This document shows positions 8,831 through 61,461 of a stretch of DNA of 64,000 bases, in pieces. Position 1 is the first letter of the stretch; each line of letters opens with the position of its first letter. The notes below the pieces were generated by a model. The model ran no database searches, was not told where the DNA came from, and saw only the letters and a list, made by a program, of their open reading frames with translations. Source of the stretch: Octopus bimaculoides (taxonomy: Eukaryota); contig NC_068981.1 of assembly GCF_001194135.2 (NCBI RefSeq), forward strand, positions 177,787,942 through 177,851,941, read 5' to 3'. A program made the position numbers and the translations under genes.

Positions 8831-8971
8831 ATTGGTACAAGGGAAGTGTCTATCAATTAAACTAAGAAAGATTTTACCTACTCTGGTCCGAACATTTTAA
8901 AAGAATGGCAGTGTGAGCCAAAGCGCTTTCTGGTGACACTTTCTCTTGGTAGGGTTAAGGTCTTGGCATGT

Positions 8972-35204: not shown

Positions 35205-36151
35205 CTGTAATGAAAAGAAAAATTTCTATTAAACATTTATTCAATACATTTTTTTCTAAACAAGTGACAAGTTTAAACAAATATGTTAACTAAACCTGAA
35301 GAAATAAGAACTTAACTGAACCTAAAAGCTATCTCAAATCCAAAATCGTAACAAATTTTGGTCATTATAAGAAGGAAAAAAGCAAGAAAGATACAAGTTA
35401 TAAAGCATCAGTCCATAATATTATACAGTAACAAGTCAGAGAGGTCTATAGACTTCATGCTACAGTGCAAGAATTATTTCTTCTCATAGAAATAACAAGA
35501 GTGAGGCTGAGAAGTTTGCTTCCTAACAACATAGTTTCAAGTTAGGTGCAGCTATATGGCACTGTGCCTTCGGCTATAGCCCCAGGTTGACTAAAGCCTT
35601 GAGAGGATTTGGTAGATGGAAACAGAAAGACGCTCATCATAAATGTATGCGTGTGCAAGTGTGTGTTTGTGTTTCCTTGTCTTGACATCATGTGATGATT
35701 GTAAAAGAATATCACAGTCATGGGAAAATATTACCTTGCTTGGAAACAGGTAAAGGTTGGTAATAAGAAGGACATCCAGCTATAGAAAATCTGCCTCAAC
35801 AAATCCTGCTTGATCTGAGCAAGCATGAAAAAGTGGATGTGAAAACAATGATGATGATGATGATGATGATGATATGCACGTTCATTTACACTTGTGCATT
35901 GCTGAAAATAGTGAGCTACAGGTGTCGCTGTCAATCCTTCTGTCAACAAATGGTCAGCTGGCTTAGCAACTTCAAAACTTGCATGTGAAATAATAAATCC
36001 CTTACTTGAAAAACAATAAGGGTTAGCAACAGGAAAGGCATCCAGCTGTAAAACAATGCCTCAGTAATATATTTGCCTAACCCATGCTAGCATGGAAAAA
36101 CAGATGCATAAACTAACAAAAACAAATGAATGAAGCAAAATTAAAACATAC

Positions 36152-36551
36152 ATCAAGTGATTCTTGTCCTTGTCCTTCTCCATCAATAATGGCAGCTGGG
36201 TCAAAGTTCAAATCTCCTAAATTTCTATGGTGTGATGAAGTGTCTGTAGTAGGTGTATTACTTGGAGTGGAGCTGTTAGGCTGATGACTGAGCGGATGGC
36301 TGCCATTTGATGAACTGTTGGGAACTTGTGATTGGCTGGGCGGTGTCATGTGATTGTTGATGCTAGAAGGATTCTGTTGGTGTTGCTGCTGTTCCATTCC
36401 AGGATGAGAAGATCTCAGCTGTTGACCAGTCTGTTCAGCAGCACTGGGATTATACTGGCTTGAAGGAGGTGGCGGCAGTGGTGGGGGTATATGGCCACCC
36501 AGTTGTTTGTCTGTTGAATGTGGTGGTTGCTGTTGCTGATGTTGCTGCTGT

Positions 36552-36586
<35 letters not shown>

Positions 36587-36741
36587 CTGTTGTTGTTGTT
36601 GTTGTTGCATTGGTGGTTGTCCACCAGGTGGCCCACCAGCCATATTCTCATTAATATGACTTAACTGTCCTGGAAAATCTGGAGGTCGGCCTTGAAAATT
36701 CCCACTTCCATCATTGTAGTTACTACCTGTGAATGGTGCTC
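36152..36741 (-). CDS. ZMIZ1: ZMIZ1 exon, C-terminal Pro/Gln-rich region with polyQ (APFTGSNY...GQGQESLD)
   Basis: TTTTTCAG|GA ... GAT|GTATGT; 590 nt; phase 1-0. Confidence 0.93.
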
Positions 36742-37331
36742 CTGAAAAAAATAAATGAATATATTCCAGACATCATGTACCACAAACTCATTCATATAGT
36801 AATTCCATACTTATAGTTTGTTAACTTTAGATTTCATTTTACTTCAAAGCACAGATAATTTATTTTCTCTCTTCAAATGAAATATTATATCTATATCAGT
36901 TCAACCCAAGTACAGCAAATTTAAATACAAAAGCATTTATAAAATATTACTGGTCTTGGTAAGAACAGTTTCTGGAATTCACTGAAGAATTAAACCACTG
37001 AGACAATATAAATCTGACATTAACTTTGATATCAAAATAGTTCAAAGTGCTGTATGTTTCTGTTTTCATTCCTGTAGATATCTTTTATTATCAATAAAGG
37101 GGCTTTAGGAGGATAATTTAAATCAAAAAGTGAAAAGCAACAGGAATGATAGAAAAAAGAATCTGACTTCCTTCAATTTTGATGCACAACATTCTGCATT
37201 TACTGTATTGGAACTTCTTTCTCAATTAACAAAATTGTGAGACAAAGAAAGAGAAGAAATTTATTTTACCACCTAAACTTTTCAAAATATATACTTTAAA
37301 ATAAAATCGAATCAATGCTAAAGATTTCTAC

Positions 37332-37469
37332 CTTGAGAGGCAGGAGGCAGGGGATAGGGAGAATGCTGGCGAGCATTTGGACCAAATTCCCATGAATTCA
37401 TAGTTGGTAAGGGCATACTTGATGGAGACATGGCTTTCATCCAGCGACTGTTACCACCACTGCATTGTT
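37332..37469 (-). CDS. ZMIZ1: ZMIZ1 exon (QCSGGNSRWMKAMSPSSMPLP...PPASQ)
   Basis: CCTTCAG|AA ... G|GTAGAA; 138 nt; phase 1-1; preceded by a 100-nt intron. Confidence 0.92.
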
Positions 37470-37569
37470 CTGAAGGGGTAACAAGAAAATTTTTTTTCTT
37501 AGTAAGAATTCTAAAATGGCTGCCAAAATTAGCAAAGTAAAAAAATAACTGGATGAAATCAAAATTTAC

Positions 37570-37730
37570 CATTTTCATCAGGTTCTTGTTTCACGGCTGT
37601 CTTTAATGGTACAGGTTTCCAGCTTGCAGTCTGGTCAATAGTAACTTCTTCAAAATCTGTCTGAGCCAAATTATTGAGAACCGCCCAAATATACTGGTCA
37701 ATTTCAAGACCTTCCAGTAAAGCTGTTTTG
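37570..37730 (-). CDS. ZMIZ1: ZMIZ1 exon ([15 protein letters not shown]...[16 protein letters not shown]...PDEN)
   Basis: TTTTCAG|C ... G|GTAAAT; 161 nt; phase 2-1. Confidence 0.96.
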
Positions 37731-37769
37731 CTGAAAATGTGCAAAAACAATTTTTGTTCAGATTCTATA

Positions 37770-37823
<54 letters not shown>

Positions 37824-38505
37824 TACAGAAACATTAGCATAACACATAATAAATACTGCAAACAGAAACACATATAACAAATATCGAAGACATTAAAATA
37901 CTATCTAAAAGATTGCTGATGTTGCACCATTATCACATTAAATTGTAAGTAATCTAGTGTTGTAGTAAAGTAAATATTAATCTTTTTAAATACATTTTGT
38001 ATCATCAAGAATTGTTGGCAAATCAATCTAATTCTATAGCAAGCTGAGCCAAAAGAATCATACTTTTCTAAACATAGATGGACAGAGCAATATGCACTCA
38101 CTCACACATACAGACACACACAAAAAGATACATTAATGGTTTGACATTGTCATTTGAGTTGTGTTATATACCTACATTACATTTATTGAGGTTAAAAGTA
38201 CTTTGTATTTTCTATGTATTATTTGGCAAAATGCCTTATAATTTTAGAATAAAAGCAGCTATTCGTTTTTGCTCCTTCCTATGAGATAGAGTAATCTCAA
38301 TGTTCATATAACTAAAACAAAATGCTGATCAATAACTTTGCAAATCAAATATTTTGTTAAAAGACGAGAAAATTCAGGACTAATTTACATTCGTTACATA
38401 GTAATAAGTATGAGTAGTGTTGGAAGTTTTATGTAGCATCTATACAATAAGAAGAAAAGCAAACATTAATTTGCTAATCTTTGAAGATATAAAATATTTT
38501 ACTTA

Positions 38506-38634
<129 letters not shown>

Positions 38635-41483
38635 CTACATATCCCATTACATTTTGGCATAACCTGCCGATAACTTTGACCTCTAAGAAGCTGCCCACCT
38701 CTCTACCTGACACCAAGGAAAGATACCAGTTAGAAGCTAAATTCTGCTCTCCTAAATCCAAGTACAAATTAGCAAAGAGATTCATCAAACCTGCTGGTAT
38801 GTAGTATAAAATATAAATAAATCAATAAATAATAAAAACTAAGTGTCACTAATAGATGTTAATTTTCATTATACACAAAAAAAAACAAAAAAACTTCAGA
38901 TGATTTAACAATAATAGCATGCAAGGCCAATGAGAGGATTGGTAGAAGAAAACATAATGATGCCACATACATATATACACACACATGCATATGCATGTGT
39001 GCACCCATGTGTGTTTATATTAGCAATTGCTTACAATGGGTGTTGTTGTCCTACCACCCACTACACTCTGTAAAGTGGGTGGCGTTAGAAAGGGCATCCT
39101 GCCATAGAAACCATGCCAAAACAGACTCCAGCTGTCCAGCTCCTGTCAAACCATCCAACCCATGCCGGCATGAAAGATAGATGTTAAATGATGGTGATGA
39201 GGAGGCGGAGGAAGGACATCTATCTATAACAATGCCTTAAATAACAGGTGTTCAACTAATACAAACATGGAAAAACAAATATAAAACGAACGAATGAATC
39301 CATAACCAGCAGGAACTTTATGCATCAATTAGTTTAGAAGTGATAGTTGTGTATTTAAGAAGTTTGCTTGAAAACAATGTGGTCCGTTTCCTCCATATAG
39401 CACCTTGCTAAGAGTCTTCAATTACAACCATATATTGCCCACTGCTTTATGATTGAAATTTAATACATGAAAACTGGAAATATGACTGTAGGAAGCCTGA
39501 TGTGTGTGTGCATGTGTCTCCACAAGTCTTCCCATTGGCAACATTTGGAAAGGGTAACATTTATTTTTATGTCCCACATCTCAATGCTCCAACATGAAAA
39601 TCGGACAGTATAAAGGACCTTGTTTGAAAAAAACATATAATGGTTGCCGTTAAGAATAATATCCAGTCACAGAATACTGCACTGCCTCAAGATGTTTCAT
39701 CCTGTGTATGCCAGCATGGAAAAAGCATGCATAAAAATATAAATGATGATATAGAGGTATCAATCAGTTCAGAAATTACTGTTCATTCTGTTATTTGTTT
39801 CAATCTTTGGATTGTCCACACTCCTACCCTAGAGTGTGTGTTTCTGGTTGAATATATTGGCCAAAGTGCTTATTTACTTTATTGACCTTGGAACATGGAA
39901 AGGCAAAGCAGACCTCTATGAGATTTGAACTTAGCTCATGAAGCTAAGAAGTGTGATCAAACACTAGAATGTAGTTGGCCCAACACACACATACACATAT
40001 AGAGTCATATGTGCATAACAAATTTTTAGAATAGATGCATCACATCTTTGTCATAAGAACATCCAGTCATGAAATACTGCCTCGACATGCCATCCTTGGA
40101 GAGTGGATGTAAAATTGATGATGATGATGATGATGATGATATATTCTTTTTTTTTTCTTTTACTGGTTTAATTGATGAATTTGGCCCAAATTCATATTTC
40201 AGTCTGGAACTTATTTTGTCTACTGATCAGTGAAATTACAAATGTAGAAAACATGACCATAAACCCAGATCCTATATACTATAGGCTTTGGCACTGTGTC
40301 CATCTACCAAATTTCTCTTACAAACTATTAATCAACCTGAGGTTATACAACAAGACACTCGCCAAAGTGCCATGCAGCGGGATTGAACTTAGAATCATGT
40401 GGCTGCAAATTGAATTTCTTATTCACACAGCTACACCTGCACTTGTGTGTGTACCATCATTTTTTGTTTTCTTCTAGCAATCCTCTCATTGGCCTTGTGT
40501 GTTAAATCACGTGTGTGAATGTATGAGTGTGTATGAATGTGTGTGTATGTGTGCGTGTGCATGTGACAAGTGAGCAGACATGGATAGCTAGGTCCCTTTA
40601 GCTCTGGAGAGGACACAGCAACCTCTCTAGTGCTGATGCCCCCCCCTCCCGACACGCACACACACAACCTAGTACACTCAGTAATGTGGCTGGTGTTAGG
40701 AAAGACATCCAGCTATAAAAACCAAACTAAAATTGAAACATGAGTGAGATATGGTTCTCCAACTCGTCTTGAACTGTACCTCTGAACATCCACTGGTTTT
40801 GACTGTGGCCACCCATCCAACCCATGCTAGCAGGGGGCATATAACGACAGTATGTAAGCACTGTAAGCGTGCATGTGCATGTTTGTGCATGCATGCACAC
40901 TCATGAATTCTGAATAGTCCCCATCTCTCAAATTTCATTCACAAGGCTTTTGTCAACAAAACATAATTGTAGAAGACACCTGCTGAAGCTGTATTATAAG
41001 GAGGTCAAACCCAGCGTCACATGGGTTTGAAAGTGAATTTTTTTAGCCACATGGCCATAACTGTACCCATGTATGCTTGTTGTTGTAAGTATTAATGAAA
41101 AATCAAGTATTGCTTTTTGTGCAGACTTCAAATTCAATTTGGCAAAGCAATGGCCACAAATAGTTTTTACACAAAGAGATAGATTAGCATCTTATTTTTA
41201 GCTTACATAACTGCAATATAATATTAATGCTTTCATTGGCAGCCACAGTTTTTTCAAAGACATATTTATCTACAAAAACACAGTGTAAATGATCAATGTT
41301 TTTTTTCTCCTATGTCAATGAAAAATTCATATTTAGAAAAAAAAAAGAGATGTTATAATATGCGTTTATTGAAATGGGAATGGTGTAATACATTTGTCGC
41401 AGGGAAATACACTTAGAACTTCAAACAGTTTCTGTATTTAGCAGGGAAAGTGTGAAGTGAGGAAAATAGACAAGAAAGCTTAC

Positions 41484-41638
41484 CTGGATGTGTTTGCAAT
41501 CATGTCCTCGAGCTGGCAAGGTTATCCTTCGGAACGTGATTGGACATTTCAAAGACACTTTCATAGCTGTCTGCTCTACACCATCTTCTCCATTCAAAGT
41601 ATTACCTCCAGCGGGAACATTGCTAAAGTTTCTTTTGA
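41484..41638 (-). CDS. ZMIZ1: ZMIZ1 exon, SP-RING/MIZ finger first half ([26 protein letters not shown])
   Basis: TTATCAG|TC ... CAG|GTAAGC; 155 nt; phase 1-0. Confidence 0.97.
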
Positions 41639-42423
41639 CTGATAATTCCAGAAGAAATGATTCCATTAGATGAAATAAACACAGCATTCAAAGTAAGAAA
41701 TGTCATAATATTTAACAATTAGAGCTAAAAAGCCTCTCTACCTTTTATTGTTTTAAATTGTAAATTTAGTCTGCATTTTCAGTATCATTCTTCTTGAGTT
41801 AATAAAGAACCTTATAATCAAAATAGTTCTGAAATATCTATTTTATTTCTATTCTTCTTAAATTATTAAACAGCTGGCCAACTAAGCTTAATCTGTTTTT
41901 ATTATTTTCAAAATAATTGCAGCAGGCTTTTGCAACCTGTTTAAAAGTGGTGTTTATTTTATTTTCCTCGGTAGCATAGCAATGACAGTTAATAGTACAA
42001 AAAACTATGGAAATATTCAGCAGGAGAGCTGGGCACAAGGAAACATGAGCATTTTTTAAAACTCTGTTAAAATGTGGACAAATCTGATCATAAGTCATTA
42101 TGTAATATTATATTTAAAATGTTTAGTGCTAAAACAAAAATGAGGATTAAAGTTTTTGTTGTACAGTAATTTGTTTCAGGAAATATCTTCTGTCCCAGCT
42201 TCTTCAAGTAAAACATAAGTAATTCACTAATGCTTCCTTTAGTTTACATCTTCCACTACAAATTATTCGTTCTTTAACGTTTATAAATAATTATACAAAT
42301 GGAAGTGATAAAACTATGACAATATTGATATATTGGTGTAAATAACTTTAACTTAACTCATTTGTAAAATAAAGGAAAATAATATTATTAAAAGTCAGGT
42401 CTTAACAGCTGAAACTAGAACTA

Positions 42424-42696
<273 letters not shown>

Positions 42697-42761
42697 TTAG
42701 CATATAAACATCAATAAATTACTATTGCAAATAAAATCAATGAAAACTTTATCCAATAGAC

Positions 42762-43385
42762 ATCATCAGCATCGGTTAACGCCTGTTTTCCGTGCTGGCA
42801 TGGGTTGGACGGTTCGACTGGGGTCTGGGAAGCCAGGAGGCTGCACCAGGTTCCAGTCTGATCTGGCAATGTTTCTACAGCTGGATGCCCTTCCTAACGC
42901 TAACCACTCTGAGAGTGTAGTGGGTGCTTTTTTTTTATGTGCCACCAGCACAGGAGCCAGAGGGGGCTGGCATTGACCATGATCAGATGGTGCTTTTTAC
43001 ATGCCACCGGCACGGAAGCCAGTCAAGGTGGCACTGGCATCGGCCACGTTCGGATGGTGCTTTTTACATGCCATTGGCACGGGGATCACAACTACAATTT
43101 CCATTTGATTTGATTTTGATATTGCCCTACGATCCAAGGTACTTTTGAGTGGGCTGATTATGTGACACTGGAGTAGGTTACAGCTGTGAACTCATTTTAT
43201 TTGTCAGGTCTTCTCAGTCACAGCATATCTCCAGGTCACAGTCTTTTGTCATTGCCTCTGTGAGGCCCAACATTCGAGGGTCATGCTTCACCAATTCATC
43301 CCATGTCTTCCTGAGTTTCCCTCTACCCCGGATTCCTTCCACTGTTTAGGAGTGGTACTTTTTGACACGGCTCTCTTATCCTGTG
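42762..43385 (-). mobile_element. RTE LINE 3' fragment in a ZMIZ1 intron (ORF2 end GRGKLRKTWDELVKHD + 3'UTR with internal tandem repeats)
   Basis: Peptide and 3'UTR similarity to 16845-18470. Confidence 0.85.
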
Positions 43386-43687
43386 TTTGAAAAGACAATC
43401 TCTCCTCCAGTACTGGTATCATAGTCACACCTGGATTTACTTTGTGTTACTGTAGTAGAGGGAATTGGTAATGGCAGCAGTAGCCAATTTAGATCAAAGA
43501 AACATACAAAACAATATAAATTTAGCCAACATCTTTTTTCAGTTCAATAATTTCAACAACTTACACTTTAATGCATGAAATGAAAATTTGCAACATTATT
43601 CTTATAATTCCATGATTGATTATACCAATAGAAAAAAATTGAAGCAACGAATATAGAAATAAACTGAAACTATAACAGGACACTTAC

Positions 43688-43898
43688 ACAACAGCATGCT
43701 GTTACTGTTATTTGTATGGTGTTTCGGCCTGGTTGGCATACATCCTTCAGATAGAGGGGCTTATGAGAAGTCTTATTTTCTCCTCGCTCTATATTAAGGG
43801 GGGTTGCATTGACACTGACCGTGACAGATGCTGGCCAATTTGTATTCATTTGCCTATCTTCATGATGAAAACATTTCAGCTGCAGTTCAAGGTCAGAT
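43688..43898 (-). CDS. ZMIZ1: ZMIZ1 exon ([25 protein letters not shown]...[14 protein letters not shown])
   Basis: TTTTCAG|A ... TGT|GTAAGT; 211 nt; phase 2-0; not in the ORF track in this frame. Confidence 0.97.
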
Positions 43899-44263
43899 CT
43901 GAAAAGACATACCAGTAAAATTTAATAAAACTTTTACGATAATTTCTCACTCCACCTCTCACCATTTCAGTGCAACAAACAATATAACTCATGAATAAAT
44001 TTAATTTAAAATATTTGTATTGTAAAATTACCAACTTGAAATGCAGACCAATATATTATAAATTCTTACTGCTTTAAACTCATTAACCATTAAAACAAGC
44101 TTTCACTGCACCCTCCGTTAGTTTGTAGCAGCACAAGTACAGACAGACAGAATCCACCTCCCCTCTCTCACTCACCAACACACACAATAGCTGACCAACA
44201 AATATTACAGAAATTAACATTAAGGATAATGCATAGAAGAAATGAAGAAATGATGCTACTAAC

Positions 44264-44399
44264 CGCCACATAAGAGTTTGATAAACAGATTCCCGTAAGT
44301 GAAAGGCATGGTTGCTCACTGCTAAATTGTGTTCCAATCGGAACGGATGAAGTACAGTGCCATCTCGTACAGGAAACGTTAATCGGAGTTCATCATTCT
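44264..44399 (-). CDS. ZMIZ1: ZMIZ1 exon ([44 protein letters not shown])
   Basis: TTTTCAG|AG ... CG|GTTAGT; 136 nt; phase 1-2. Confidence 0.97.
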
Positions 44400-45307
44400 C
44401 TGAAAAGACAAGGAAAATTTATTGAAGGATGCATGTTTTTGCCTCTAATTTCATATCTATCTATCTATCTATATACATACACACAAACAATGAGTGTCTT
44501 TCTGTCTCCATCCACCAAATCCTCTCACAAGCTTTTGGTCAGCCAGAAGCACTTGTCCAAGGTACTACGCAGTAAGACTGAGCCCTAAATTATATTGTTT
44601 AGAAGCAAGCTTCTTAGTCACATAGCCATTTTTATGACTATTGCCATATAATGCTAGAAAACTTCACTTCTGCTAATTCATAACTTCTCACTATGAATTA
44701 GTGAAAGTGTTGTTCCTTTGCTAAAACATTATATCTATTTTTGTCTACATACACACCAAATTATCTTGATAGCTCTCACACTGTTCTATAGTGAAGTCCT
44801 GAAGGCACAGGGATTCAATTAATAATGAATTGGGTTCGACTGGTAGTTGTATAAAACAAAAACAAAAACTAAACGTCACATAACAGCTAGACAAATTGAT
44901 AACTTGGCCTTAATAATCACACAACATTTTTTATTTTGTAATATGCCAACACATCTCAAATAGAGGTGTGATCTTTTATTTTTTTAAATGGAAACAGTAC
45001 ATGCCAATGAGGTCATAGTTTTGCAAAGAAATGGAAAAATTAAAAGCATCCTTGTCATTTTAGCAACTGATCATAAACATTTGACATCTCCAAAGGAGGA
45101 CCTGGTTCAATTTCAGCAAAGGATGTCAAACCATAGATCATTTTAGTCCATGTTAAGACTGCTTTTACAGTTATCATCAGTTCGTTCAATTTCCAAAACA
45201 CATTGTGTCACGCGTGACCTCACACATCTTGTAACACTGTTTATAGTGCTTAACAAGTGTTTTATAGGGGCAGACTGCTAAACCAACACATTTTCTTTTT
45301 TTTTTTG

Positions 45308-45344
<37 letters not shown>

Positions 45345-45538
45345 GGAAGGAGAGGTTGAGCACAGTAGTGCAAGCTAACAAAATATTTGTCAATGTTACA
45401 ATGCTTCTGTTGTTAATTATAGTAAGCTGTACTACATTATGGTACCTACTTACAATAGTTATATTAGATCAAGGTTACAGTAGGGCAACAGCAATAGAAT
45501 ACAAATTCTTATCCTTTTGTCTGTTTGTCCAGTACATT

Positions 45539-45916
45539 GTTGTTGTTGTTGTTGGCACTCATCGTTTATGACGTTGAGGGTTCCAGTTGATCCGATCAAC
45601 GGAACAGCCTGCTCGTGAAATTAACATGCAAGTGGCTGAGCACTCCACAGACACGTGTACCCTTAATGTAGTCCTCGGGGATATTCAGCGTGACACAGTG
45701 TGACAAGGCTGACCCTTTGAATTACAGGCACAACAGAAACAGGAAGTAAGAGTGAGAGAAAGTTGTGGTGGAAGAGTACAGCAGGGTTCACCACCATCCC
45801 CTGCCGGAGCCTCGTGGAGCTTTAGGTGTTTTCGCTCAATAAACACTCACAACGCCCGGTACGGGAATCGAAACCACGAGTCCGCTGCCCTAACCACTGG
45901 GCCATTGCGCCTCCAC
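45539..45916 (-). mobile_element. SINE family A copy with (CAA)n tail, 11-bp TSD with 1 mismatch
   Basis: TCCAGTACATT (45528) / TCCAGTATATT (45917); highly similar to 2603-2984. Confidence 0.9.
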
Positions 45917-45986
45917 TCCAGTATATTACTGAGTCAACTATTTACACCCCACCCACAAACCTTTATCCTTTATGATAAGTCTTTAC

Positions 45987-46137
45987 CTTTCTTAATAGGT
46001 AATGTTGGTTTCAAATCTTGAAACTGTGGTTTTATATCAGCACCTGGGGATACATATGGGGGTACTGCACTGCCTGGGGTCATTGGTGGTGTTGGGTTAC
46101 CAGGGAGTGGTGAGTGCTGGTAGTTCATGTTAGTTTG
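45987..46137 (-). CDS. ZMIZ1: ZMIZ1 exon ([23 protein letters not shown]...PIKK)
   Basis: TTTCAG|CAA ... G|GTAAAG; 151 nt; phase 0-1; conserved [13 protein letters not shown]. Confidence 0.95.
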
Positions 46138-48375
46138 CTGAAACAAAGAAAATAAGACAAAAAGTTGTAAAAAAAAAAAAATCAATTACAAGACATTTTA
46201 ATATTTTTGTGTGCATGTATGTATAAGTATGTATGTATGTATGTGTGAGTGTGTGCACAATATAAAAATATCAAGCAACAACCTTTTCATTCATCCATCC
46301 ATCCATGCATCTGTCAATCAAGAACTGAGTATCTTGGAAGTAGATTTGACCTACTTTTAGATGTCTATCAGTTGCTTGGGCCTCTAACCCAGGAGGCATT
46401 GCACTAACCTCTCCTCTTATCTGGAAGAGGAGCAAAAAAGTAAATAATGATCTCTTTACAACAGTGAGCTCTTTACTTTTCTAAACTATGATATTTATCA
46501 ATTAGCTAGACATATAATTCATAAAATAGCAATTCAAATTAAATACAATAATAATAAAAACTATTATTTTTTTTTTTTAGATTGAAGAGGCATAAGTCTA
46601 TTGTAAAATTCACTTGTATATTTTTTCCTTACAAAAAAAAAAATATATATATTTTTTTTTATATATAACCGTTACTATGAATAGAATAACTGCACGAGTA
46701 TGTATGCGTGTGTTTGTGAGTTTATGTACGTACGTGTAACTGTGTACACATAAGTAACAGCTGTTTATAACTCGGCAAAATGTTTTTACAATTAGATTTT
46801 TTTTTCTTTTTCAAGAAAATCAATGACCATCTGTTTTTCTTCTTTTTCTAATTTCAGTCAGCTCCAACAGTATATATATACATATATATATTTGTGAGCC
46901 TAATACTCTAACCATTGAGCCATGTGCCTTCATGTGTGTGTTTGTGTATCTTCTCAAAGAAAATCTAGTGGAGCAGTGAGTGTTCAGTACCTCAAATAAC
47001 CTGCTCAAAAAGTTATTTCTCGTATTCGAAATCCACATCTCTTTTAAATGTGACATGTTTTCATGTGAAAGTCGATGTTATTTTCACAACAAGCATTTAT
47101 ATCTGCAATTTATAATATAATCACTTTCTAATAAATACATACATACATGCATACATACATGTGTGTGTGTAAGCAAAATAAAATTTGATTCATTTCAAAT
47201 TTTGGTTTTTCACAACTGTCAGCTAAAAGTATATTTCTTTCTGTTTTTATGCCTCACCCCACTTTAAGTTAACATGCAATGTCACAATTTTGCTCCGGAA
47301 TAAGACACATACACAATGCATAACTGAATGCTAGCAAGGCCTGCTCCTATTTCATGATGAGTTCTTAGAACGAGGAAATAAACAGCTATGCTGTTGTACA
47401 TACAAAAAAAAAAAAAAAAAAATTTTTTAAAGGGGTGAAGGGTAGTTGCTCTAATAATATCTATACTATTCATGGTAGTAAGGAATAACAGACACTGACA
47501 TAACTAAAACAAATCAATATGAATTCATAATCTGTAAGAAAGTAGCACTGATAATATATCACCCTCAAATTAGGGATGTTTCTATGATATTTCTCATCAG
47601 TCATCTGACTGCAAATGGGAGTATTCCAAAAGAGTATTTCTTTGCACATAACATACACCTTCTTGTTGTTGTTCCTCTTCATCATCATCATCTTTTTATC
47701 ATCCACTTTTTCATGTGTGAATGGATTGGACAAAATTCATTGAGCCAGATTTGTTATAACCAAATTTCCTGAAGAAATCCTTTGTGTATGTGCATGCATG
47801 TCAGTGAGTGTGTGTGAGAGAGAGATAGAGAGATATAAAGAAATAGATAGATAGATAGAGAGAGAGAGAGACTCTAAGTATCATGCAATAGTTACAAATG
47901 AGTGCAACTATCATATAAGTTTTATATGAAGGTATTTATACTTGGCCATTATACAATGGTGATTTCCAGAAGCAAAGATCTTTGGTCCCACCTAACTCTT
48001 AACTTGGGGTGTGTTTTATTTACCGACAAATATATTATGTATATCAGTGCAACAATATAAACATGTCTCCATCCCATATTTATTTATATAAATAAATGAG
48101 GGAAGACTCAGATGATGATAAAACAGAATTCAGATAAATCATAAATCGTCAACCAGTTCGCTGCAAAGCAACAGTGCTGACAAGTCATTTGCCAAATCTC
48201 ACTCATATATACACACACACGTTCTTCAATTACACATACACATGTAGACATTTACAATTGATGGATAGTGGTGAGAAAGGTGAAAAGGTAGTGAAAAGAA
48301 ACTGCACAAAGCCCAAACCAGTTAACTAGATTAAGTTACAAAGAAAACCAGTTATAAAGTTGTAGTAAAACCTAC

Positions 48376-48621
48376 CTGAAAATTTTGCTGTGTAGGGAAC
48401 TGGTTGGGAAAACCAGGGGGTTGGGGTTGTCTAGTGGAGAATTGATTTGGCCCCATATATATATTTTGACCATTGGAATAAGGTGGGGTAGGTCCATTAG
48501 GGCGAATGCCTTGCTGTGGTGGCCCTACATAGTTTGGTGAGGGCAAGGGTTGTTGAGTTGGAGGGTACTGTGCCTTGCCCGGGTGCTGTGGTTGGCTCCC
48601 ATATGCTGTTGGTGCACCATA
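48376..48621 (-). CDS. ZMIZ1: ZMIZ1 exon, Pro-rich (YGAPTAY...LPSPNY...QQNFQ)
   Basis: CCTACAG|TAT ... CAG|GTAGGT; 246 nt; phase 0-0. Confidence 0.9.
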
Positions 48622-49469: not shown

Positions 49470-49529
49470 CTGAAAATGAGGAAAAATTCATGTGTAAAGA
49501 AAGAGAGAATTTAATTAATCTCAATTTAG

Positions 49530-53749: not shown

Positions 53750-53990
53750 CTGTACTTGGGGACCATACTGATTGTTCATGTTCATATTCATGTTCATATT
53801 CATCTGTTGCTGCTGGTTCTGTTGCTCTTGGATAGCTACCATGCTGGCTGTGGCTGTGGCTGTAGCTGTGGCAGTGGCAGCCGCTGCCACCAGAGCAGCA
53901 GACAGCGCTGCTGGAGCAGCTGGGTATTCATTATTGCCGGACATCTGGGAAGGGTTAGAACCTGGAGTATTTGGAGTTGGAGGGTAACCA
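53750..53990 (-). CDS. ZMIZ1: ZMIZ1 exon, Ala/Thr-rich region (GYPPTPNTPGS...AAAATATATATAS...NQYGPQVQ)
   Basis: Acceptor TTTTTCAG (phase 2), donor CAG|GTATTG (phase 0). An alternative donor 6 nt upstream would end the exon at 53756. Confidence 0.92.
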
Positions 53991-54469
53991 CTGAAAAACA
54001 AAAACATATTTTAAAGCTTCACAAGAGCAAAGAAAAAAAGAAACAGAACAAAAGAAAAGAAAAAAGAAAAAGAATTCTATTATATTCCAATACAAAAGCT
54101 AATTCCACAAATGTTGACCATATTCCTTATCTAGAGAAAGCTTTAAAAGATTTTTTTTAAACTATATATATATATATATTTACAGACTCAGGAGTTTGAA
54201 AGTACTTTACGCACACAAGCACACAAAGTAATGAAACCCATGATTTTATTCTTTTATGCTCAATGATATAAGTGTTCCTAAGATTTCTGATGGTGGGAGA
54301 GATGGCTGAAAAATATTCAAGCACCACTACAGTGAAAGGAAATAGGCATTTAAACATAAAGCAATTTATTCATTTTTAGTGCTTAACAAAAACTCTAATA
54401 AATAAATGATGGCCATGATGATGATGATGATGATGATGATGACAATGATGAATTTGATGATGAAAAATA

Positions 54470-54965
54470 TTTCTTTCTACTATAGGCACAAGGCCTGAAA
54501 TTAGGGAGAAGAGTGGGGTAAGTCAACCCCAGAACACAATCGGTACTTATTTCATCAACCCTGAAGGGATGAAAGATGAACTTGAAATGTTAAGAGCAGA
54601 ACAAATATTGCAAAGTATTTTTTTCCAATGGTCTAATGATTCCACCAGCAATTTTAGGGGAGGGGGAGTCAATTACATTGACCCCAGTTTTCAACTAGTA
54701 TTTATTTTGGCAACCCCAAAAGGATGAAAAGCAAAGTCAACTTCAGTGGGATTTGAACTTAGAGCATAAAGTGCCAAAAGAAATGCCACTCAGTATCTTG
54801 ACCAATGTACCAATGATTCTGCATTAATAATGATAATAACAATCTTTTCAAGTCTAGGCACAAGGCCTGCAATTTTAGGGGTGGGGGTTAGTCGATTACA
54901 TCAACCCCAGTGCTCCACTGGTACTTATTTTATCAATGAAAGGCAAAGTCAACCACAGCGGAATA
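54470..54965 (-). mobile_element. Cluster of SINE family C units
   Basis: Reverse complement of the family C unit, about 3 partial copies. Confidence 0.7.
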
Positions 54966-54970
54966 ACGAC

Positions 54971-55009
<39 letters not shown>

Positions 55010-56217
55010 AATAATAATAATAATATGATGATGGAAGTGCAAGAATTCTTTGCAGGATTCTTGAAGCATGACCAGTAAAACAAAGCCTGCTGGCTGTGGA
55101 CAGCTGACACTTTTCATCATACCCAGCAATATAAGCTGTGAGATTTAATACAATAATAATAATAATAATAATAATAATATCCTACAGTATGATGAAATAT
55201 AAACCTAACAATCAAAAGCATAAATAATATTTCATCACATATATTCATCATCAATCTTTTGAAAGATAAAAATGCACTTTATGTTTCAAGACTAAAAGCT
55301 TGTCTAAACAACAAGGCAAGCAATACTGAAACAAATCATTAAATATACTTTAANNNNNNNNNNNNNNNNNNNNNNNNNNNNNNNNNNNNNNNNNNNNNNN
55401 NNNNNNNNNNNNNNNATATATATATATATATATATATAGCTCTGCATTTGAATACATAGTTCAGACTAGACTAAAAACCTAATCCTATGAGAAAACATTT
55501 CAAAGTTCAACACTTCTTAGGATTTATTACAGAGTTAAAAAAAACAATATATTTAGCATAAAATAAATAGTTCACAAATATAAGCTAATTGGAAATGTAA
55601 AGAATTCAATGATTTGATGTTAGTGCCTTGAAAGTTTTGTCTACAAAAGTCATTTCTATTCTACAATTAAACACTACTTACAACTTCATTAAAAAAGCAC
55701 ATTCTCTTCATTTTATGCATTGGAAATTAGAAATTAAACGAAAGCAGCCTATTCATAACGTACTGCATTTTAAAATAATTTTCAAACACACACACATTAC
55801 ATATCTGCAAATACAACTGGGAAATATTAACTAACATTATACCTGACACAGTAATTTAAACCATCAATTATATATGATAAAATCAATTTTTTTATAAGAG
55901 ACTCAAGTTTTTAATACTTATACCACACACACACACAGATATATGTATACACATACATACACATATGTTGATTCACTTTTTCAAGAGTGATTTAAACATG
56001 TTTAAAAAGTTTTCAGACTAAAATTTAACAAATTTTTCAAATGTTGCTAAATTCAAGATAATATGATTTCAATGAATTTTTATATTTTAAATTAGTCTGC
56101 AGGCAATAATTTACAATGAATAAATAAACAAATTTACAGTTAGTAGACATTTCATGCTTTTCAGTTTTGCTAACTTCCTTATGATAAACAGAAAATACTA
56201 AAAACACATCATGCACA

Positions 56218-56248
<31 letters not shown>

Positions 56249-57911
56249 AAGAGGGAAAAAAGATAGAGCGAGAGAGAAAGAGGGAAAAAATAGAGAGAGA
56301 GAGTGGGGGAGGGAAAGCTGATTAAATCAAGAAAATGTAACACTGGAATTATTTAAGTGGGTGGATATGATCTAGTAAGATGGATTGAGTTTTCCTGGTT
56401 TGGAAGACCCCACCCTAAAAATGATCTAAAAATATTTAGAGGTATCAAATGTGATAAATGGTAAAGGGATACTTCAGTTGTAGTGTTAGTGGATGCATAT
56501 GGCTCTAAACTTGTGTTTGGAATGAAATTCTACTGCATTTAGTGACATAAGCAAGGACAAACTACATTTATAATCTAAATAGAAAATATTGCTATCACCA
56601 TGACTTGTTTGAACAAAAGTGGTCATTGAGTCACAAAACGTGTCCCGGTTATATACACACTTGGGTATGAAAACGTCACCACACCCATTGTGTATGTAGA
56701 AGTGACCTACTTTTTTTTCTAAAATACTATTGATTTGGAATGGGACCAAATGTAATCATGCAGAACAATCCAATCTGCACTAGTACAGAAGGTTAGTTTA
56801 TTCAAAATGATAGACATGATGAGTGGGCTGAAATTGAACAAAAACACCCTTAATCTAAATGGGTTTCATCAAATCATTTAATCTATAAATAATGAAATAT
56901 AAAGGTCAACGAAATGTAGCATTCTACCTGAGGAAGTTTCCTGGATATTTTTGCCACAGTAACATAAAGTTTTTTAATTATTTGGTTTTCTATGTTAGTA
57001 ATATTTGGTTTTCTATGTTAGTAATAGTGAAGAAAAGCTAAAATGTGAAAATAAGAAGCAATTTAATAATTTTATTTTATCCCAAATAAAGTATAAAATC
57101 ATGGGTCAGTAATGTATTGTATTTAGCAGGATGGTGGGAATTTAATGTGTAGAATACTAAGCCCAACAAACACAAATACATAGCATCAGATTTCTTATAA
57201 ATCATCAACTGCTGCATAAGTAAAATGCAAGCAGGAAATGTGATGTTAGCTAATTTCCTGACAAATAGACAACTTTACAATAATTCCTGCAGCAGAATTC
57301 ATGTCTTGTTACATACACAGTTTGGAATGATTTTAGATCTCAGAGTGAGAGGTTAACACTCTTTCATAATTGAAGGAGGGGGAAAAAAAAAAAAAAAAGC
57401 ATGTTTGTCATGTTAACAGAAATGATCATGACACCATGTAAATGAGAATTTACAACACTAACAACTTAAAGTTTTAGGAACATGAAAACCATTGGAAATT
57501 TAAATACTGATTTAATCACATACCATTACAGTATATTTACTTAGAGCATGAATTTGAATATTAGTTATGTGTATATAGTCATTTTCCTAATTTAAATAAG
57601 CTACATATTTAAGTTGGTAATTATTTAAAATGAAGGATGCTAACAATGTCATATATATAGAGAGAGAGAGATTTAACATATACTAGTTGTAAATAACTAT
57701 AACAGGTGCATTATAAGTGTGTGTTAGTAATAATAAAACAATTAAAACAAAACATGGAAAATTAATATAAAGTCCAATAGATGAGAACTAGTGAAAGTAT
57801 ACAAAATTAACTGTTTGACTAGAAATTGAATAAATGCAAGAAAACATATTTTGCAACTATCACAATGTTCTCAAATATTGGAAGAGATAACATCTAGGCA
57901 CTATTACTCAC

Positions 57912-58010
57912 GCAACAGATAGGGCTGACGGTGAAGGGGCAGGGTAGTCATGATTACCCGGCAGAGGGAGTGGGGTCGACCCCGGGGTATTCGGTGTGGG
58001 TGGATAACCA
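57912..58010 (-). CDS. ZMIZ1: ZMIZ1 99-nt phase 2-2 exon (GYPPTPNTPGSTPLPLPGNHDYPAPSPSALSVA), paralogous to the next exon
   Basis: Acceptor TTCGTTTTAG and donor GC|GTGAGT; open frame; GC/CpG-rich island in AT-rich intron; 11/11 aa identity with the start of exon 53750-53990. Confidence 0.85.
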
Positions 58011-59379
58011 CTAAAACGAAAAATAAATAAGACAAAAGCAAATTAGGATTTCCCAAACAAAGTAATGTCAATTAATATTGAGAACTGGTAAAGAAAAAAA
58101 AAAAAGTCAATTAGCAACTAAAATCACAAGCATTGGAGTTATAAGTAGAAAACTGCTTTAAAAATTAACACATCTGATATCCCCCAATAGAGTTTAGGAT
58201 CTTCATAAAATCAATTCATTTTTTTTTTTTTAAATTAAGCTATGGATTAAAAATCACTTTGATTTTTGTGTATAAAGTTTTAAATTGATATGTTGAAAAA
58301 CTATTTTAGAATTAAAATTTAACAGATCAAACTACTTTAACAGTTTTAAATCACTAATTCTAAAACTTAGTGGTAGTCAGGAATGTTTACATTATCTTAA
58401 ATTATGAATTAATACATTCCATATATCTATCATTGCAGTTGATCCAATAGTAACAAGCTACTGAACCAGTTGAAGTAATTATAATACCCTACTATGGGAA
58501 TGAGTACTTTTTGTGTCATTCATTAGAATATATATATATAGAATTCTAACTAGGGCAAAACCAAAAATGTTAAGCTCAACTATTCGCAACTAACATAAGT
58601 ATCTTTATGAGAGAACATTGAATGAAGTACAATAAATAATAAATGAAAATTAAAATTTCATGAATAAACAGGATTAATATAAATTACACAAAATGAAATT
58701 GATTTAATTAATACATCAGTATTTAAAGAAACTTCACAAATGCAATGTAATCATCCCCCATACACACTACACACATTCACACACAAAGAAGCAGTTATCT
58801 TATATATAAGAAGTACAAATACAATTAAAAAACACAAACATTATTATAAAAAAAAAAAGCAATTTCCTGAATATTGGGAAAAAAAGTACATAACATTTAA
58901 TGAATGGTTGTTAAATAGGACTATGTGAAATTTTCCAGTTGGCCTAAAAATTAGGTTTTTCTTTTGCAATTATAATAATTTAGTAACAATCATATATGAG
59001 AGAACTGCCATCAATGAAATCTGATTTCACAATGTAATAAACAACAACAATGAAGCAATGCATATAATTTATGAAACAAATTCAATTTTGATTGTTAATC
59101 ATCTAGGTAACAAATTGTGTCTTTTGTTCTTCAATGAGTGTGTATTTATGTGTATGTATGCATATGTGTCCCTGAAGAAAACAGGTTAGTAGGGTTTATC
59201 TGTCTCATTGTTAAAATGTTTTGACCTTTCCCATGAAAGACTTGCTAAAAATACATAAATACTTGTTTTCAAAAGGTTTAATTCTGTCTGAAAAGAGAGT
59301 TTGTTCTTTACAAATCATTCACTATTCATTAAAAAGTACTTTTTATATATATATTGCAGTTGTTGTCTTACCAACATCA

Positions 59380-59510
59380 ACTTTGCTTTTAATCTTTTCA
59401 GGACTGTTGAAACGAAGTACCAGTTAAGTATGACACCCACCGCCACCCAACTAATATTGACTAATCTCCTCCCACGGAATTTCAGACCTTGTGCCTATAA
59501 TGGAAACATC

Positions 59511-59546
<36 letters not shown>

Positions 59547-60720
59547 GGTGGTAAGCTGGCAGAATTGTTAGCACACTGAATGAAATGCTTAGGAGTATTT
59601 CGCGCAGCATTACATTCTGAGTTCAATTTCTTCAAAGGCGGCGAGCTGGCAGAAACGTTAGCACGCCGAGCAAAATGCTTAGAGGTATTTTGTCTGCCGT
59701 TACGTTCTGAGTTCAAATTCCGCCGAGGTCGACTTTGCCTTTCATCCTTTCGGGGTCGATAAATTAAGTACCAATTACGCACTGGGGTCGATGTAATAGA
59801 CTTAATCCGTTTGTTGGTCCTTGTCTGTCCCCTCTACGTTTAGCCCCTTGTGGGCAATAAAGAAATAAGAAAGGATTATTGTTATTATTATTTTGGCAGA
59901 ATCATTAGCACATTGCAAAAAAATGCTTTGCGATACTTATGTTCTGGCCCTTTGCATTCCAAGTTCAAATCCTATCAGGGTTGATAAAAAGATAGCAGCC
60001 AAGTACTGGAATTGATGGTTAGAACCAACCAGCTTCTCAAAATTTCTGGCTTTGTGCCTAAGCTAGAGACAACAACAACTACCATAACTAATATTTTGGT
60101 AGAAAAGACTTAATGGTATTTTGTTCTGGTTCTTTGCAGTCTGAGTTTAAATTCTACCAACATCCAGTTTGGCTTTCATCCTCTTGGAGCTGATAAAACA
60201 AAGTACCAATCAAGTACTGGGTTGATGGTATCAACTAATCCTCTCCTTCAAATCTCAGGCCTTGTGTCTATATTAGAAACAATTCTTCTTCCTGCGGGTG
60301 ACACGTAAAAGCACCCACTACACTCTCTGAGTGGTTGGCGTTAGGAAGGGCATCCAGCTGTAGAAACTCTGCCAAATTAGATTGGAGCCTGGTGTTGCCA
60401 TCTGGTTTCACCAGTCCTCAGTCAAATCGTCCAACCCATGCTAGCATGGAAAGCGGACGTTAAACGATGATGATGATGATTATTATTATTATTATTATTT
60501 TTATTATAATAATTACTATAATAGGAAGGCATCAAACTGGCAGAACTGTTAGCATACTGGAGAAAATGCTTAGCTGCATTTCACCTGTCTTTACATTCTG
60601 AGTTCAAATTCTGCCATGGTTGATTTTACCTTTCATCCTTTTGGGGTCCATAAAAATAAGTGCCAGTTGATCACTGGCATCAATGCAGTTGACTAGTTCC
60701 CTCCCCCTATAATTATTACA
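59380..60720 (+). mobile_element. Cluster of SINE family C units including a CpG-intact young copy (about 59636-59870)
   Basis: GGCGGCGAGCTGGCAGAAACGTTAGCACGCCG...GAGTTCAAATTCCGCCGAGGTCGAC. Confidence 0.85.
60302..60480 (+). mobile_element. RTE 3' end inserted in the SINE cluster
   Basis: About 94% identical to the reverse complement of 52204-52379. Confidence 0.88.
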
Positions 60721-61461
60721 ATAAAAACAATTTCTTATTTTAGATTTAAGTAAACTAAGATGTTAAAATGTTTTACGTTAGCCACCTGAGCAAGTGTGGG
60801 AGTATTTCTGCCATGTTAGACTGAGCTGAGTAATTTTTGCAAATTCCTTAATTGGCATAAATTTTAGGGTTGAATTGCATTAGTCACACGTCCTCCATTA
60901 CGTTATCAATACAGCATTCAAATTGTAGTCTTTGTAGCACAAGTGTTTCCTGACAAGTATACTGACACAAATAGTATAATGTCCTTCTTAAGAGAAACCT
61001 CTATTAGCACAATGAAAATAAGTCTATCAAATAATTTTTTCAAATAACATTAAAAAACCTTTCTGTGTGTGTGTGCTTGTGTGTGTATACATACATACAC
61101 ACACACACACATTGACTCATATACGTGCAATATACTTGTATATACATCTTCACATATATGTGTGTGTGTGTGTGCGTGCGAACATACATACACACACAAT
61201 CATTAATAAATACAGCTGAATAGGAATGTTATGAAATAATATAGTTTACACAGAGACAGAATAAGGAAAAAACTGTCACCATGAGGCACAGGTGTTCATA
61301 AAGCTTAGTTCTTCTGCGTGCTGCAGTGAAAATGTGTTCTTTCTCGCTTCTAATAATATACACTTATCGCCCCCCCCCCACTCTATTATGCAAGCATAAC
61401 AGATTAATTTTGATTACAAGCTGAATCCTCAACTCATTCAAAATAATGATAATAAAATATT

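What the first reader, a model, noticed from the sequence alone, without database searches (positions are those of the whole stretch)
57912..58010. Hidden, anciently duplicated ZMIZ1 exon under purifying selection
Seen: this exon gives GYPPTPNTPGS-TPLPLP-GNHDYPAPSPSALSVA; the next exon (53990 down) starts GYPPTPNTPGS-NPSQMS-GNNEYPA-APAALSAA. Both start in phase 2 after T-rich acceptors. The first 11 residues are identical, yet 9 of 11 codons differ only at position 3 (TAT/TAC, CCA/CCT, CCC/CCA, ACA/ACT, CCG/CCA, ACC/ACT, CCG/CCA, GGG/GGT, TCG/TCT). The exon is 99 nt, phase 2-2, with a consensus GTGAGT donor, so it can be skipped in frame, and about 4 kb around it lacks recognisable transposons. 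Inference: a cassette exon that toggles one versus two copies of a TP/SP-rich motif (candidate proline-directed phosphosites) just before the Ala-rich region. Strict mutual exclusion is unlikely because the partner exon ends in phase 0.
Basis: partly seen in the sequence, partly recalled or inferred. Interest (0 to 1): 0.8.

Follow-up and report, generated by a model that had tools for sequence, protein, structure and literature searches.

The report
Ancient duplicated ZMIZ1 exon, still conserved
A 99-base piece in an intron of a mollusc (probably octopus) ZMIZ1 gene is an old partial copy of the next exon that selection has kept coding; this is an ordinary kind of exon duplication, and I could not test whether it is spliced into mRNA.

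Summary
On the minus strand, 58010..57912 is a 99-nt open stretch with a T-rich acceptor, a likely branch point and a GTGAGT donor. It encodes GYPPTPNTPGSTPLPLPGNHDYPAPSPSALSV(A). This is homologous to the first 96 nt of the next exon (53990..53750) of a gene with ZMIZ1/ZMIZ2 domains.

Similarity is confined to exactly these 99 nt (z about 20); both flanks are at chance level. Against exon B, dN is 0.19 and dS 1.75. The first 11 codons have 9 synonymous and 0 non-synonymous differences (P about 1e-6). Exon A keeps every residue that is invariant or nearly invariant in exon-B orthologues of other molluscs. It is a 60% GC island in roughly 17-30% GC intron.

So a partial tandem exon duplication, old enough to saturate silent sites and kept under purifying selection, is well supported. 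Three other mollusc loci and an Elysia protein have one copy only.

Untested here:
- whether the exon is spliced in
- whether it is alternative or constitutive
- whether it is unannotated
- whether the TP/SP sites are phosphorylated

It is a new member of a known kind, of moderate interest.

The parts
57912..58010 (-). Exon A: a 99-nt in-frame exon (phase 2-2) encoding (x)GYPPTPNTPGSTPLPLPGNHDYPAPSPSALSV(A). It is a partial tandem duplicate of the 5' part of exon B.
   Evidence: Sequence and translation. Homology to exon B: z = 19.9. dN 0.19, dS 1.75. It keeps all invariant motif residues. GC 0.59-0.61 in an intron of roughly 0.17-0.30.
58011..58046 (-). 3' splice region of exon A: candidate branch point CTAAT (58046..58042, branch A about 32 nt upstream), a polypyrimidine tract, and the AG at 58012..58011.
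   Evidence: The tract and AG are as good as those of exons B-G of the same gene. Actual use is not tested.
57906..57911 (-). 5' splice site of exon A, GC|GTGAGT. If it is read through, the frame stops at once (GCG TGA).
53750..53990 (-). Exon B: the conserved 241-nt exon (phase 2-0) encoding GYPPTPNTPGS...ALSAALVAAAATATATATATA...QYGPQVQ, that is, the motif plus the Ala/Thr-rich region.
   Evidence: Orthologous single-exon ORFs in many molluscs and other invertebrates. A second octopus-like species has 4 changes in 241 nt, all silent.
53894..53990 (-). The part of exon B that is homologous to exon A (donor segment of the duplication).
   Evidence: Alignments.
53991..57911 (-). Intron between exon A and exon B (3.9 kb). 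It contains SINE-like repeats (54396-55195) and an N gap (55354-55415). It has no detectable remnant of the rest of exon B.
   Evidence: repeats; gaps; downstream flank against the remainder of exon B, z = -1.1.
36116..48621 (-). Downstream exons of the same gene (C 48621..48376, D 46137..45988, E 44400..44263, F 43897..43688, G 42633..42529, H about 41639..41484, I about 38574..38509, J about 37729..37571, K about 37491..37333, last exon within 36116-36772). These identify the gene as ZMIZ1/ZMIZ2 family. None of them is duplicated.

Best explanation
Exon A is a real, selectively maintained coding exon of the single ZMIZ1/ZMIZ2-type (tonalli-like) gene of this mollusc.

Origin. A tandem duplication copied at least the 5' part of the deeply conserved exon that encodes the [G/S]YPPTPNTPG motif and the Ala/Thr-rich region. 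In the upstream copy only the first 99 nt stayed under selection. A GTGAGT donor now sits at the end of the ...ALSxA segment. Everything else in the copy decayed into ordinary AT-rich intron.

Effect. Spliced between the (unseen) upstream exon and exon B, it inserts 33 residues in frame. The disordered region just N-terminal of the Ala-rich motif then carries two tandem copies of the YPPTPNTPGS...[D/E]YPA...ALS module instead of one.

Shown: the homology, the frame compatibility, the consensus splice signals, the age and the purifying selection. Inferred: that it is spliced in, and that the second copy changes binding or phosphorylation of this short linear motif.

I lean slightly (about 55:45) towards regulated cassette use rather than constitutive inclusion. 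The only grounds are that the exon is a multiple of 3, can be skipped in frame, and is absent from the other molluscs sampled.
For: 1. Homology is confined to the 99 nt between the AG and the GT. The exon scores z = 19.9; the upstream flank scores z = 1.1; the downstream flank against the rest of exon B scores z = -1.1. The neutral parts of the copy have therefore been randomised while the exon has not.
2. Nei-Gojobori over 32 codons gives dN = 0.19 and dS = 1.75, so omega is about 0.11. The first 11 codons have 0 non-synonymous and 9 synonymous differences.
3. Differences by codon position are 6/4/20, P = 1.9e-4. In a neutral-decay simulation with the same number of changes, the first 11 residues stay intact in 5e-6 of runs, and amino-acid identity of at least 21 of 32 occurs in 3e-4.
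4. Exon A keeps every invariant or nearly invariant residue of the homologous part of 14 exon-B orthologues: Y2, P3, P4, T5, P6, T8, P9, G10, A29, L30, A33, and the acidic-aromatic pair.
5. At the 11 third positions, A matches octopus exon B at only 2. This is no better than its match to other molluscs' exon B (2-3), while exon B of the two octopus-like species matches at 10 of 11. The copy is therefore old.
6. Exon A is a GC island of about 0.6 in roughly 0.17-0.30 intron. It keeps 5 CpG (observed/expected 0.66) where the intron sits at 0.12.
7. The acceptor, branch point and donor match consensus as well as those of exons B-G.
8. The exon lies in the right intron, on the right strand and in the right phase.
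Against: - There is no transcript evidence of any kind.
- No orthologous copy of exon A from a second species could be retrieved. Constraint is shown only for the bulk of the time since duplication. A recent death of the exon cannot be excluded from one sequence.
- The upstream exon is not in the window, so the 5' junction cannot be written out.
- Exon A sits on a 6-kb contig flanked by N gaps (55354-55415 and 61462-62345), so its position depends on scaffolding.
- Three other mollusc loci and the Elysia protein manage with one copy.
Confidence: 0.8

Rival explanations
1. Constitutive exon. Exon A is real and selected, but it is simply always included in this lineage. The protein then has a fixed tandem doubling of the motif, with no isoform switch.
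For: The splice signals are strong, with a full GTGAGT donor, a long pyrimidine tract and a branch point. Weak sites are the more usual mark of cassette exons. The selection evidence fits this reading equally well.
Against: Nothing here argues directly against it. The exon is 3n and skippable in frame, and the ancestral one-copy form is what all other sampled molluscs use. That leaves room for both forms.
Confidence: 0.4
2. Relic pseudo-exon. A formerly used duplicated exon has recently lost its function and is no longer spliced in, but has not yet had time to decay.
For: There is no expression evidence. No orthologue was retrieved to test recent constraint.
Against: The frame is open and both splice sites are consensus. 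There are no changes in 23 non-synonymous sites of the motif although silent sites are saturated. GC is about 0.6 and five CpGs are retained in a strongly AT-drifting, CpG-depleted intron. Any loss of function would have to be very recent compared with the age of the duplication.
Confidence: 0.08
3. Assembly or scaffolding artefact, or an exon of a paralogue. The 6-kb contig carrying exon A was wrongly placed in this intron.
For: The contig 55416-61461 is bounded by N gaps on both sides.
Against: - The A/B divergence is about 30% at the nucleotide level with saturated silent sites, so these are not haplotypes or a collapsed repeat.
- The piece ends in a donor after 99 nt rather than running on into the Ala-rich region as every orthologue does, so it is not the exon B of a paralogue.
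- It lies in exactly the intron, orientation and phase where it can be spliced in frame, which a misplaced contig would not be expected to do.
Confidence: 0.03
4. Chance similarity of two proline-rich open stretches.
For: Both sequences are low in complexity and rich in P, T and S.
Against: The exon alignment scores z = 19.9 against composition-preserving shuffles, 0 of 500 reaching it. An 11-residue exact match coincides with a motif conserved across molluscs. The boundary, phase and first base are identical.
Confidence: 0.001

Closest known systems
Tandem exon duplication as a source of new, often alternatively spliced exons (class reviewed and surveyed in PMC9013439; human substitution events in PMC8373072 and PMC9741552; the first descriptions by Kondrashov & Koonin 2001 and Letunic, Copley & Bork 2002 are cited from my own knowledge)
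   Same: Two adjacent homologous exons lie in one gene, on the same strand, with the same starting phase. The copy is ancient and under purifying selection. PMC9013439 reports unannotated duplicated exons found by the same kind of intron scan.
   Different: The best-known cases are mutually exclusive pairs of equal length and phase. Here only the first 40% of the exon was retained (99 against 241 nt), a new donor is used, and the end phases differ (2 against 0). The only in-frame options are inclusion (two motif copies) or skipping (one copy), not substitution.
ZMIZ1/ZMIZ2 (Drosophila tonalli) PIAS-like transcriptional coregulators, and the conserved Ala/Thr-rich region of ZMIZ1
   Same: The window gene has the ZMIZ1/ZMIZ2 GBD-like domain and the MIZ/SP-RING finger. 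Exon B carries the AAAATATATATATA stretch. PMC9008544 describes this stretch as extremely conserved, lying in the N-terminal disordered region, and holding six of nine conserved amino-acid-changing variants in the human neurodevelopmental disorder NEDDFSA.
   Different: No duplication of the segment just before the Ala-rich region is seen in the other molluscs sampled. Whether other cephalopods share it is unknown. I know of no report of such an exon in ZMIZ genes: one literature search for ZMIZ1 with octopus found none.
Changes in copy number of a short linear motif in disordered regions through in-frame cassette exons
   Same: A 33-residue disordered segment rich in TP/SP and PxxP is added without touching folded domains.
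   Different: This is a resemblance in principle only. No binding partner, kinase or isoform has been shown for this motif here.

Membership tests
Tandem exon duplication-derived exon | Significant sequence homology between neighbouring exons of one gene on the same strand | tested here: met
   z = 19.9, 0 of 500 shuffles. tblastn E = 2e-12. Codon alignment.
Tandem exon duplication-derived exon | Open reading frame and intron phases that allow in-frame use | tested here: met
   99 nt, phase 2-2, no stop codon. It begins with the same base (T) as exon B, so the split codon is unchanged whether the exon is included or skipped.
Tandem exon duplication-derived exon | Purifying selection on the copy (dN much lower than dS) | tested here: met
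   dN 0.19, dS 1.75. The motif has 0 non-synonymous and 9 synonymous differences. P = 1.4e-6 and 1.9e-4. The flanks are fully decayed.
Tandem exon duplication-derived exon | Usable splice sites, and actual inclusion in mRNA | not testable with these tools
Mutually exclusive exon pair (substitution type) | Both exons have the same length modulo 3 and the same phases, so that either one alone keeps the frame | tested here: not met
   A is 99 nt with phase 2-2; B is 241 nt with phase 2-0. Joining A directly to the exon after B shifts the frame.
Conserved alternative cassette exon | Length a multiple of 3, with both the inclusion and the skipping isoforms observed | tested here: inconclusive
   The length is 99 = 3 x 33. 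The isoforms could not be observed.
Conserved alternative cassette exon | The exon and its flanking intron are conserved in related species | not testable with these tools
   No orthologous exon-A locus could be retrieved. Only the exon B region of a second octopus-like species is available (L002).
ZMIZ1/ZMIZ2 (tonalli) gene family | ZMIZ GBD-like domain plus MIZ/SP-RING zinc finger | tested here: met
   PF25527 at 6e-67 (224 bits, cut-off 26). PF02891 at 2.6e-22 (78.8 bits, cut-off 33.5).
ZMIZ1/ZMIZ2 (tonalli) gene family | Conserved Ala/Thr-rich motif in the N-terminal disordered region | tested here: met
   Exon B encodes ALVAAAATATATATATA, which aligns with orthologues. The region is described in PMC9008544.
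Proline-directed phosphorylation sites | S/T-P dipeptides that are phosphorylated in vivo | not testable with these tools
   Exon A has three TP and two SP dipeptides. No phosphoproteomic data are available here.

The most novel reading that the evidence does not exclude
In octopods (perhaps in all coleoid cephalopods) ZMIZ1 gained a regulated cassette exon. It switches the copy number of the deeply conserved YPPTPNTPG...ALS module, which sits directly before the Ala/Thr-rich region that is a mutation hotspot in the human ZMIZ1 disorder. This would give tissue-specific (for example neural) tuning of the coregulator. The exon may also be missing from current gene models.
Probability: 0.35. Interest if true: 0.45.

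Novelty: new member of a known kind. Interest (0 to 1): 0.35.

Why it matters
If the exon is used, it is a clean natural experiment on a short linear motif. The same 11 residues are kept twice, in tandem, through enough time to randomise every silent site. This argues that the [G/S]YPPTPNTPG segment next to the ZMIZ1 Ala-rich region is a functional element in its own right and that its dosage matters. That could guide work on the poorly understood N-terminal disordered region, where human disease variants cluster (PMC9008544).

For genome annotation it is one more case showing that scanning introns for decayed copies of neighbouring exons finds real exons.

It does not open a new class of mechanism.

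Tried and rejected
2. Protein search with exon A + exon B. The 37 hits comprise 36 single-exon ORFs equal to exon B in various invertebrates, plus one partial annotated Elysia protein that also covers the upstream exon. None carries exon-A-specific sequence, none is a spliced cephalopod product, and the Elysia protein holds a single motif copy.
3. Fishing for the orthologous exon-A locus through non-coding ORFs. The 55-aa alternative-frame ORF over exon A is not on record. A query joining all ORFs within about 700 bp of exon A, in four frames, gave no hit.
4. Search of 1.84 billion representative proteins with the doubled motif. It found only P0001 and two unrelated repeat proteins.
5. The upstream exon (DPNxGW...SVVTTVWGV...PFTHNTPG...) is not in the window. 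It lies beyond 64000 or in the gap 61462-62345.
6. Looked for leftover homology in the flanks, to map the size of the duplication. None was found. The apparent similarity of the pyrimidine tracts is not significant.
7. Looked for intron pairing that could loop out exon A. The best pair is 27 nt at 81% (55986-56012 with 58329-58355), which is unremarkable in AT-rich sequence.
8. Looked for Rbfox GCATG sites within 500 nt. None was found.
9. Alternative last exon by read-through. The stop codon is immediate, but there is no AATAAA within about 830 nt and the first ATTAAA is about 395 nt away. Not pursued.
10. Splicing of A to an internal AG inside exon B, which would make a substitution-type event. 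By eye, the AGs there are in the wrong phase.
11. Vector contamination, prompted by CCCGGGGTCGAC inside exon A. Rejected, because these bases encode the conserved TPGST.
12. Naming the species behind L001-L004. Accession searches in the literature found nothing.
13. A third homologous-protein search was deliberately not spent. One search had already used all exon-A words.

Full report
WHAT IS THERE

On the minus strand, 58010..57912 is a 99-nt open stretch. It is preceded by ...cctaatttgcttttgtcttatttatttttcgttttAG and followed by GTGAGTAA. Read as T + 32 codons + GC, it gives GYPPTPNTPGSTPLPLPGNHDYPAPSPSALSV, and the split last codon becomes Ala with the T that opens the next exon.

The next exon, 53990..53750, is 241 nt. 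It starts with the same T and ends at CAG|GTATTG in phase 0. It encodes GYPPTPNTPGSNPSQMSGNNEYPAAPAALSAALVAAAATATATATATASMVAIQEQQNQQQQMNMNMNMNMNNQYGPQVQ.

THE GENE

Further minus-strand exons lie at 48621..48376, 46137..45988, 44400..44263, 43897..43688, 42633..42529 and on down to about 36116. Their joined translation matches Pfam PF25527 (ZMIZ1/ZMIZ2 GBD-like domain, 6e-67) and PF02891 (MIZ/SP-RING finger, 2.6e-22). The gene is therefore a ZMIZ1/ZMIZ2-type (tonalli-like) coregulator.

Exon B carries the Ala/Thr-rich stretch. PMC9008544 describes this stretch as extremely conserved and as the main hotspot of amino-acid-changing variants in the human ZMIZ1 disorder. None of the other exons has a second copy in the window.

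The exon that should precede A is not in the window. In other molluscs that exon encodes DPNxGW...SVVTTVWGV...PFTHNTPG....

IS THE SIMILARITY MORE THAN CHANCE, AND WHERE DOES IT END?

A local alignment of exon A with the first 97 nt of exon B scores 68, against 16.7 +/- 2.6 for shuffles. That is z = 19.9, with 0 of 500 shuffles reaching it. In contrast:
- 200 nt upstream of A against 200 nt upstream of B gives z = 1.1.
- 200 nt downstream of A against the remaining 144 nt of exon B gives z = -1.1.

The homology therefore starts at the AG and stops at the GT. A duplication would hardly have had its breakpoints exactly at a splice acceptor and at a not-yet-existing donor. The simplest reading is that more was copied and that everything not under selection has since been randomised.

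SELECTION

Nei-Gojobori counts over 32 aligned codons are 18.5 synonymous and 11.5 non-synonymous differences on 27.3 and 68.7 sites. This gives dS = 1.75, dN = 0.19 and omega about 0.11. In the first 11 codons there are 9 synonymous and 0 non-synonymous differences.

- Differences by codon position are 6/4/20. The probability of at least 20 of 30 falling at third positions is 1.9e-4.
- The probability that all nine differences in the motif fall on its 11 third positions is 1.4e-6.
- In a simulation that puts 30 random changes on the exon-B segment, the 11-residue motif survives in 5e-6 of runs. Identity of at least 21 of 32 residues occurs in 3e-4 of runs.

The A-B distance sums both lineages, so one has to ask whether A alone could be neutral. 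Silent sites are saturated and A's former flanks are unrecognisable. A neutral A would therefore have taken many hits in its 23 non-synonymous motif sites, and it has none. Exon A has been constrained for most of its history. A very recent loss of function cannot be excluded from a single sequence.

WHICH RESIDUES ARE KEPT

I aligned exon A with exon B of this gene and with 13 exon-B orthologues taken. These are single-exon ORFs from various invertebrate contigs plus an Elysia chlorotica protein. Exon A keeps every invariant or nearly invariant position of the shared part: Y2, P3, P4, T5, P6, T8, P9, G10, A29, L30 and A33, plus the acidic-aromatic pair (DY). It differs in the linker, which also varies among the orthologues. 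This is the pattern expected if the copy does the same molecular job as the original motif.

AGE AND DISTRIBUTION

At the 11 third positions of the motif, A matches octopus exon B at 2. It matches the exon B of L001, L003 and L004 at 2-3, which is chance level. Exon B of the window and of L002 match at 10 of 11.

L002 is a 906-bp Logan contig from another, unnamed but clearly related species:
- Its introns differ from the window by about 10-12% substitutions plus many indels.
- Exon B has only 4 differences in 241 nt, all of them silent.

The A-B silent distance is therefore at least 15 times the distance between these two species. This supports 'ancient'.

In L001, L003 and L004 the upstream exon lies 0.3-2 kb before exon B, with no A-like sequence in between. 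These are unnamed mollusc contigs, and by exon identity L001 is the closest to the window. The Elysia protein runs ...AAYN|GYPPTPNTPGS with one copy. The doubling is therefore not a general mollusc feature. I could not establish whether it is octopod-wide or cephalopod-wide.

EXON-LIKENESS

Exon A is a sharp GC peak of 0.59-0.61 in intron of roughly 0.17-0.30. The surrounding intron is strongly CpG-depleted (observed/expected 0.12). Exon A keeps five CpGs (0.66), all in CCG or TCG codons.

Its acceptor tract, a CTAAT branch-point candidate about 32 nt upstream, and the GTGAGT donor are at least as good as the signals of exons B-G. About 4.2 kb around it (55196-59455) has no intra-window repeat except one low-complexity tract, while SINE-like elements crowd both sides.

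HOW IT MOST LIKELY WORKS

Shown: the exon can be spliced in between the upstream exon and exon B without changing the frame or the split codon. It cannot replace exon B, because A-to-next-exon is out of frame.

Inferred: inclusion adds 33 disordered residues. The protein then carries two tandem YPPTPNTPGS...[D/E]YPA...ALS modules before the Ala/Thr-rich region; skipping leaves the ancestral single module.

The motif is rich in TP/SP and PxxP, so a docking or phosphorylation role is plausible, but nothing here tests it. Whether inclusion is regulated or constitutive is open. I put it at roughly 55:45 in favour of regulated, on weak grounds: 3n length, in-frame skippability, and the ancestral form being the one-copy form.

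WHAT COULD NOT BE DONE

The protein collections contain no spliced ZMIZ1 product from an octopod and no ORF overlapping an exon-A orthologue. The cross-species test of exon A itself is therefore missing, and so is any check of existing annotation.

Exon A lies on a contig bounded by two N gaps. The matching intron, strand and phase make misplacement unlikely.

COMPARISON WITH WHAT IS KNOWN

This is a tandem exon duplication, a well-described route to new and often alternatively spliced exons. PMC9013439 surveys such duplications and reports unannotated ones. PMC8373072 and PMC9741552 treat the ancient, mutually exclusive human cases.

It differs from the textbook cases in three ways. It is a partial copy (99 of 241 nt). 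It has a newly recruited donor. It is of the add-or-skip type rather than the substitution type. It fails the defining frame test for a mutually exclusive pair.

VERDICT

The core of the interpretation (an old duplicate under purifying selection, skippable in frame, not mutually exclusive) is supported. 'Cassette', 'hidden' and 'phosphosites' remain untested.

It is a new member of a known kind. Interest is moderate (0.35): a neat, convincing case, but not a surprising mechanism.

Noticed in passing
window 55354-55415 and 61462-62345: Exon A lies on a 6-kb contig bounded on both sides by runs of N, so its place in the ZMIZ1 intron rests on scaffolding. The upstream coding exon is not visible and may lie in the 884-N gap or beyond 64000.
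   Followed up: partly
window 54396-55195, 59456-60714 (and many other places): A SINE-like interspersed repeat family with up to 40 intra-window matches flanks the repeat-free 4.2 kb around exon A. Translations of the copies share strings such as NWYL(I/F)Y(R/Q)PRKDERQSRP.
   Followed up: partly
window about 49350-49480 (-): Probable additional small coding exon between exon B and exon C (...NNQYG... / PPGSMTLAQGPPPGPG). It resembles a segment at L001 10911-10991. Its boundaries were not worked out.
   Followed up: no
window 56000-57900 versus 57912-58010: The intron is very CpG-poor (5 observed, 40.8 expected), as are exons B, C and D. Exon A keeps 5 CpG (7.6 expected), all as CCG or TCG codons. 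At three of these codons exon B has CCA and at one TCT (silent differences); at the fifth it has TCC, an amino-acid change. The cause is unexplained: local lack of methylation, or constraint on the RNA.
   Followed up: partly
window 45988-46137 (-), exon D: Exon D encodes [12 protein letters not shown], a TP-x-x-TPGS motif of the same style as YPPTPNTPGS. It may reflect a much older internal repeat of the protein, or convergent use of the same kind of motif.
   Followed up: no
window 17902-18309 (-): Reverse-transcriptase fragment (Pfam RVT_1, E = 4e-10) with a YADD motif, downstream of the gene. It is probably a dead non-LTR retrotransposon. A 205-aa Cys-rich ORF at 8282-8896 (-) has no Pfam match.
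   Followed up: partly
window 56979-57024: Perfect 23-nt tandem duplication (TATTTGGTTTTCTATGTTAGTAA twice) in the intron between exon A and exon B.
   Followed up: no
window 57906-57911 (-): If the exon A donor is not used, the frame ends at once (GCG TGA). That would give a protein truncated right after the extra motif. There is no AATAAA within about 830 nt, and the nearest ATTAAA is at 57516.
   Followed up: partly
window 1266-2192: Long imperfect trinucleotide-type low-complexity block. It is open in several frames (His-, Ser-, Met/Thr- and Leu-rich translations), far downstream of the gene.
   Followed up: no
L001 7939-20390: The unnamed ENA contig behind P0002 carries the whole orthologous gene in a more compact form (exon B to exon E is 6.3 kb against 9.6 kb here). 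Its exons are 75-81% identical in nucleotides to the window and its GC is the same (0.35). It is the closest relative with a long contig, and it has no exon A.
   Followed up: partly
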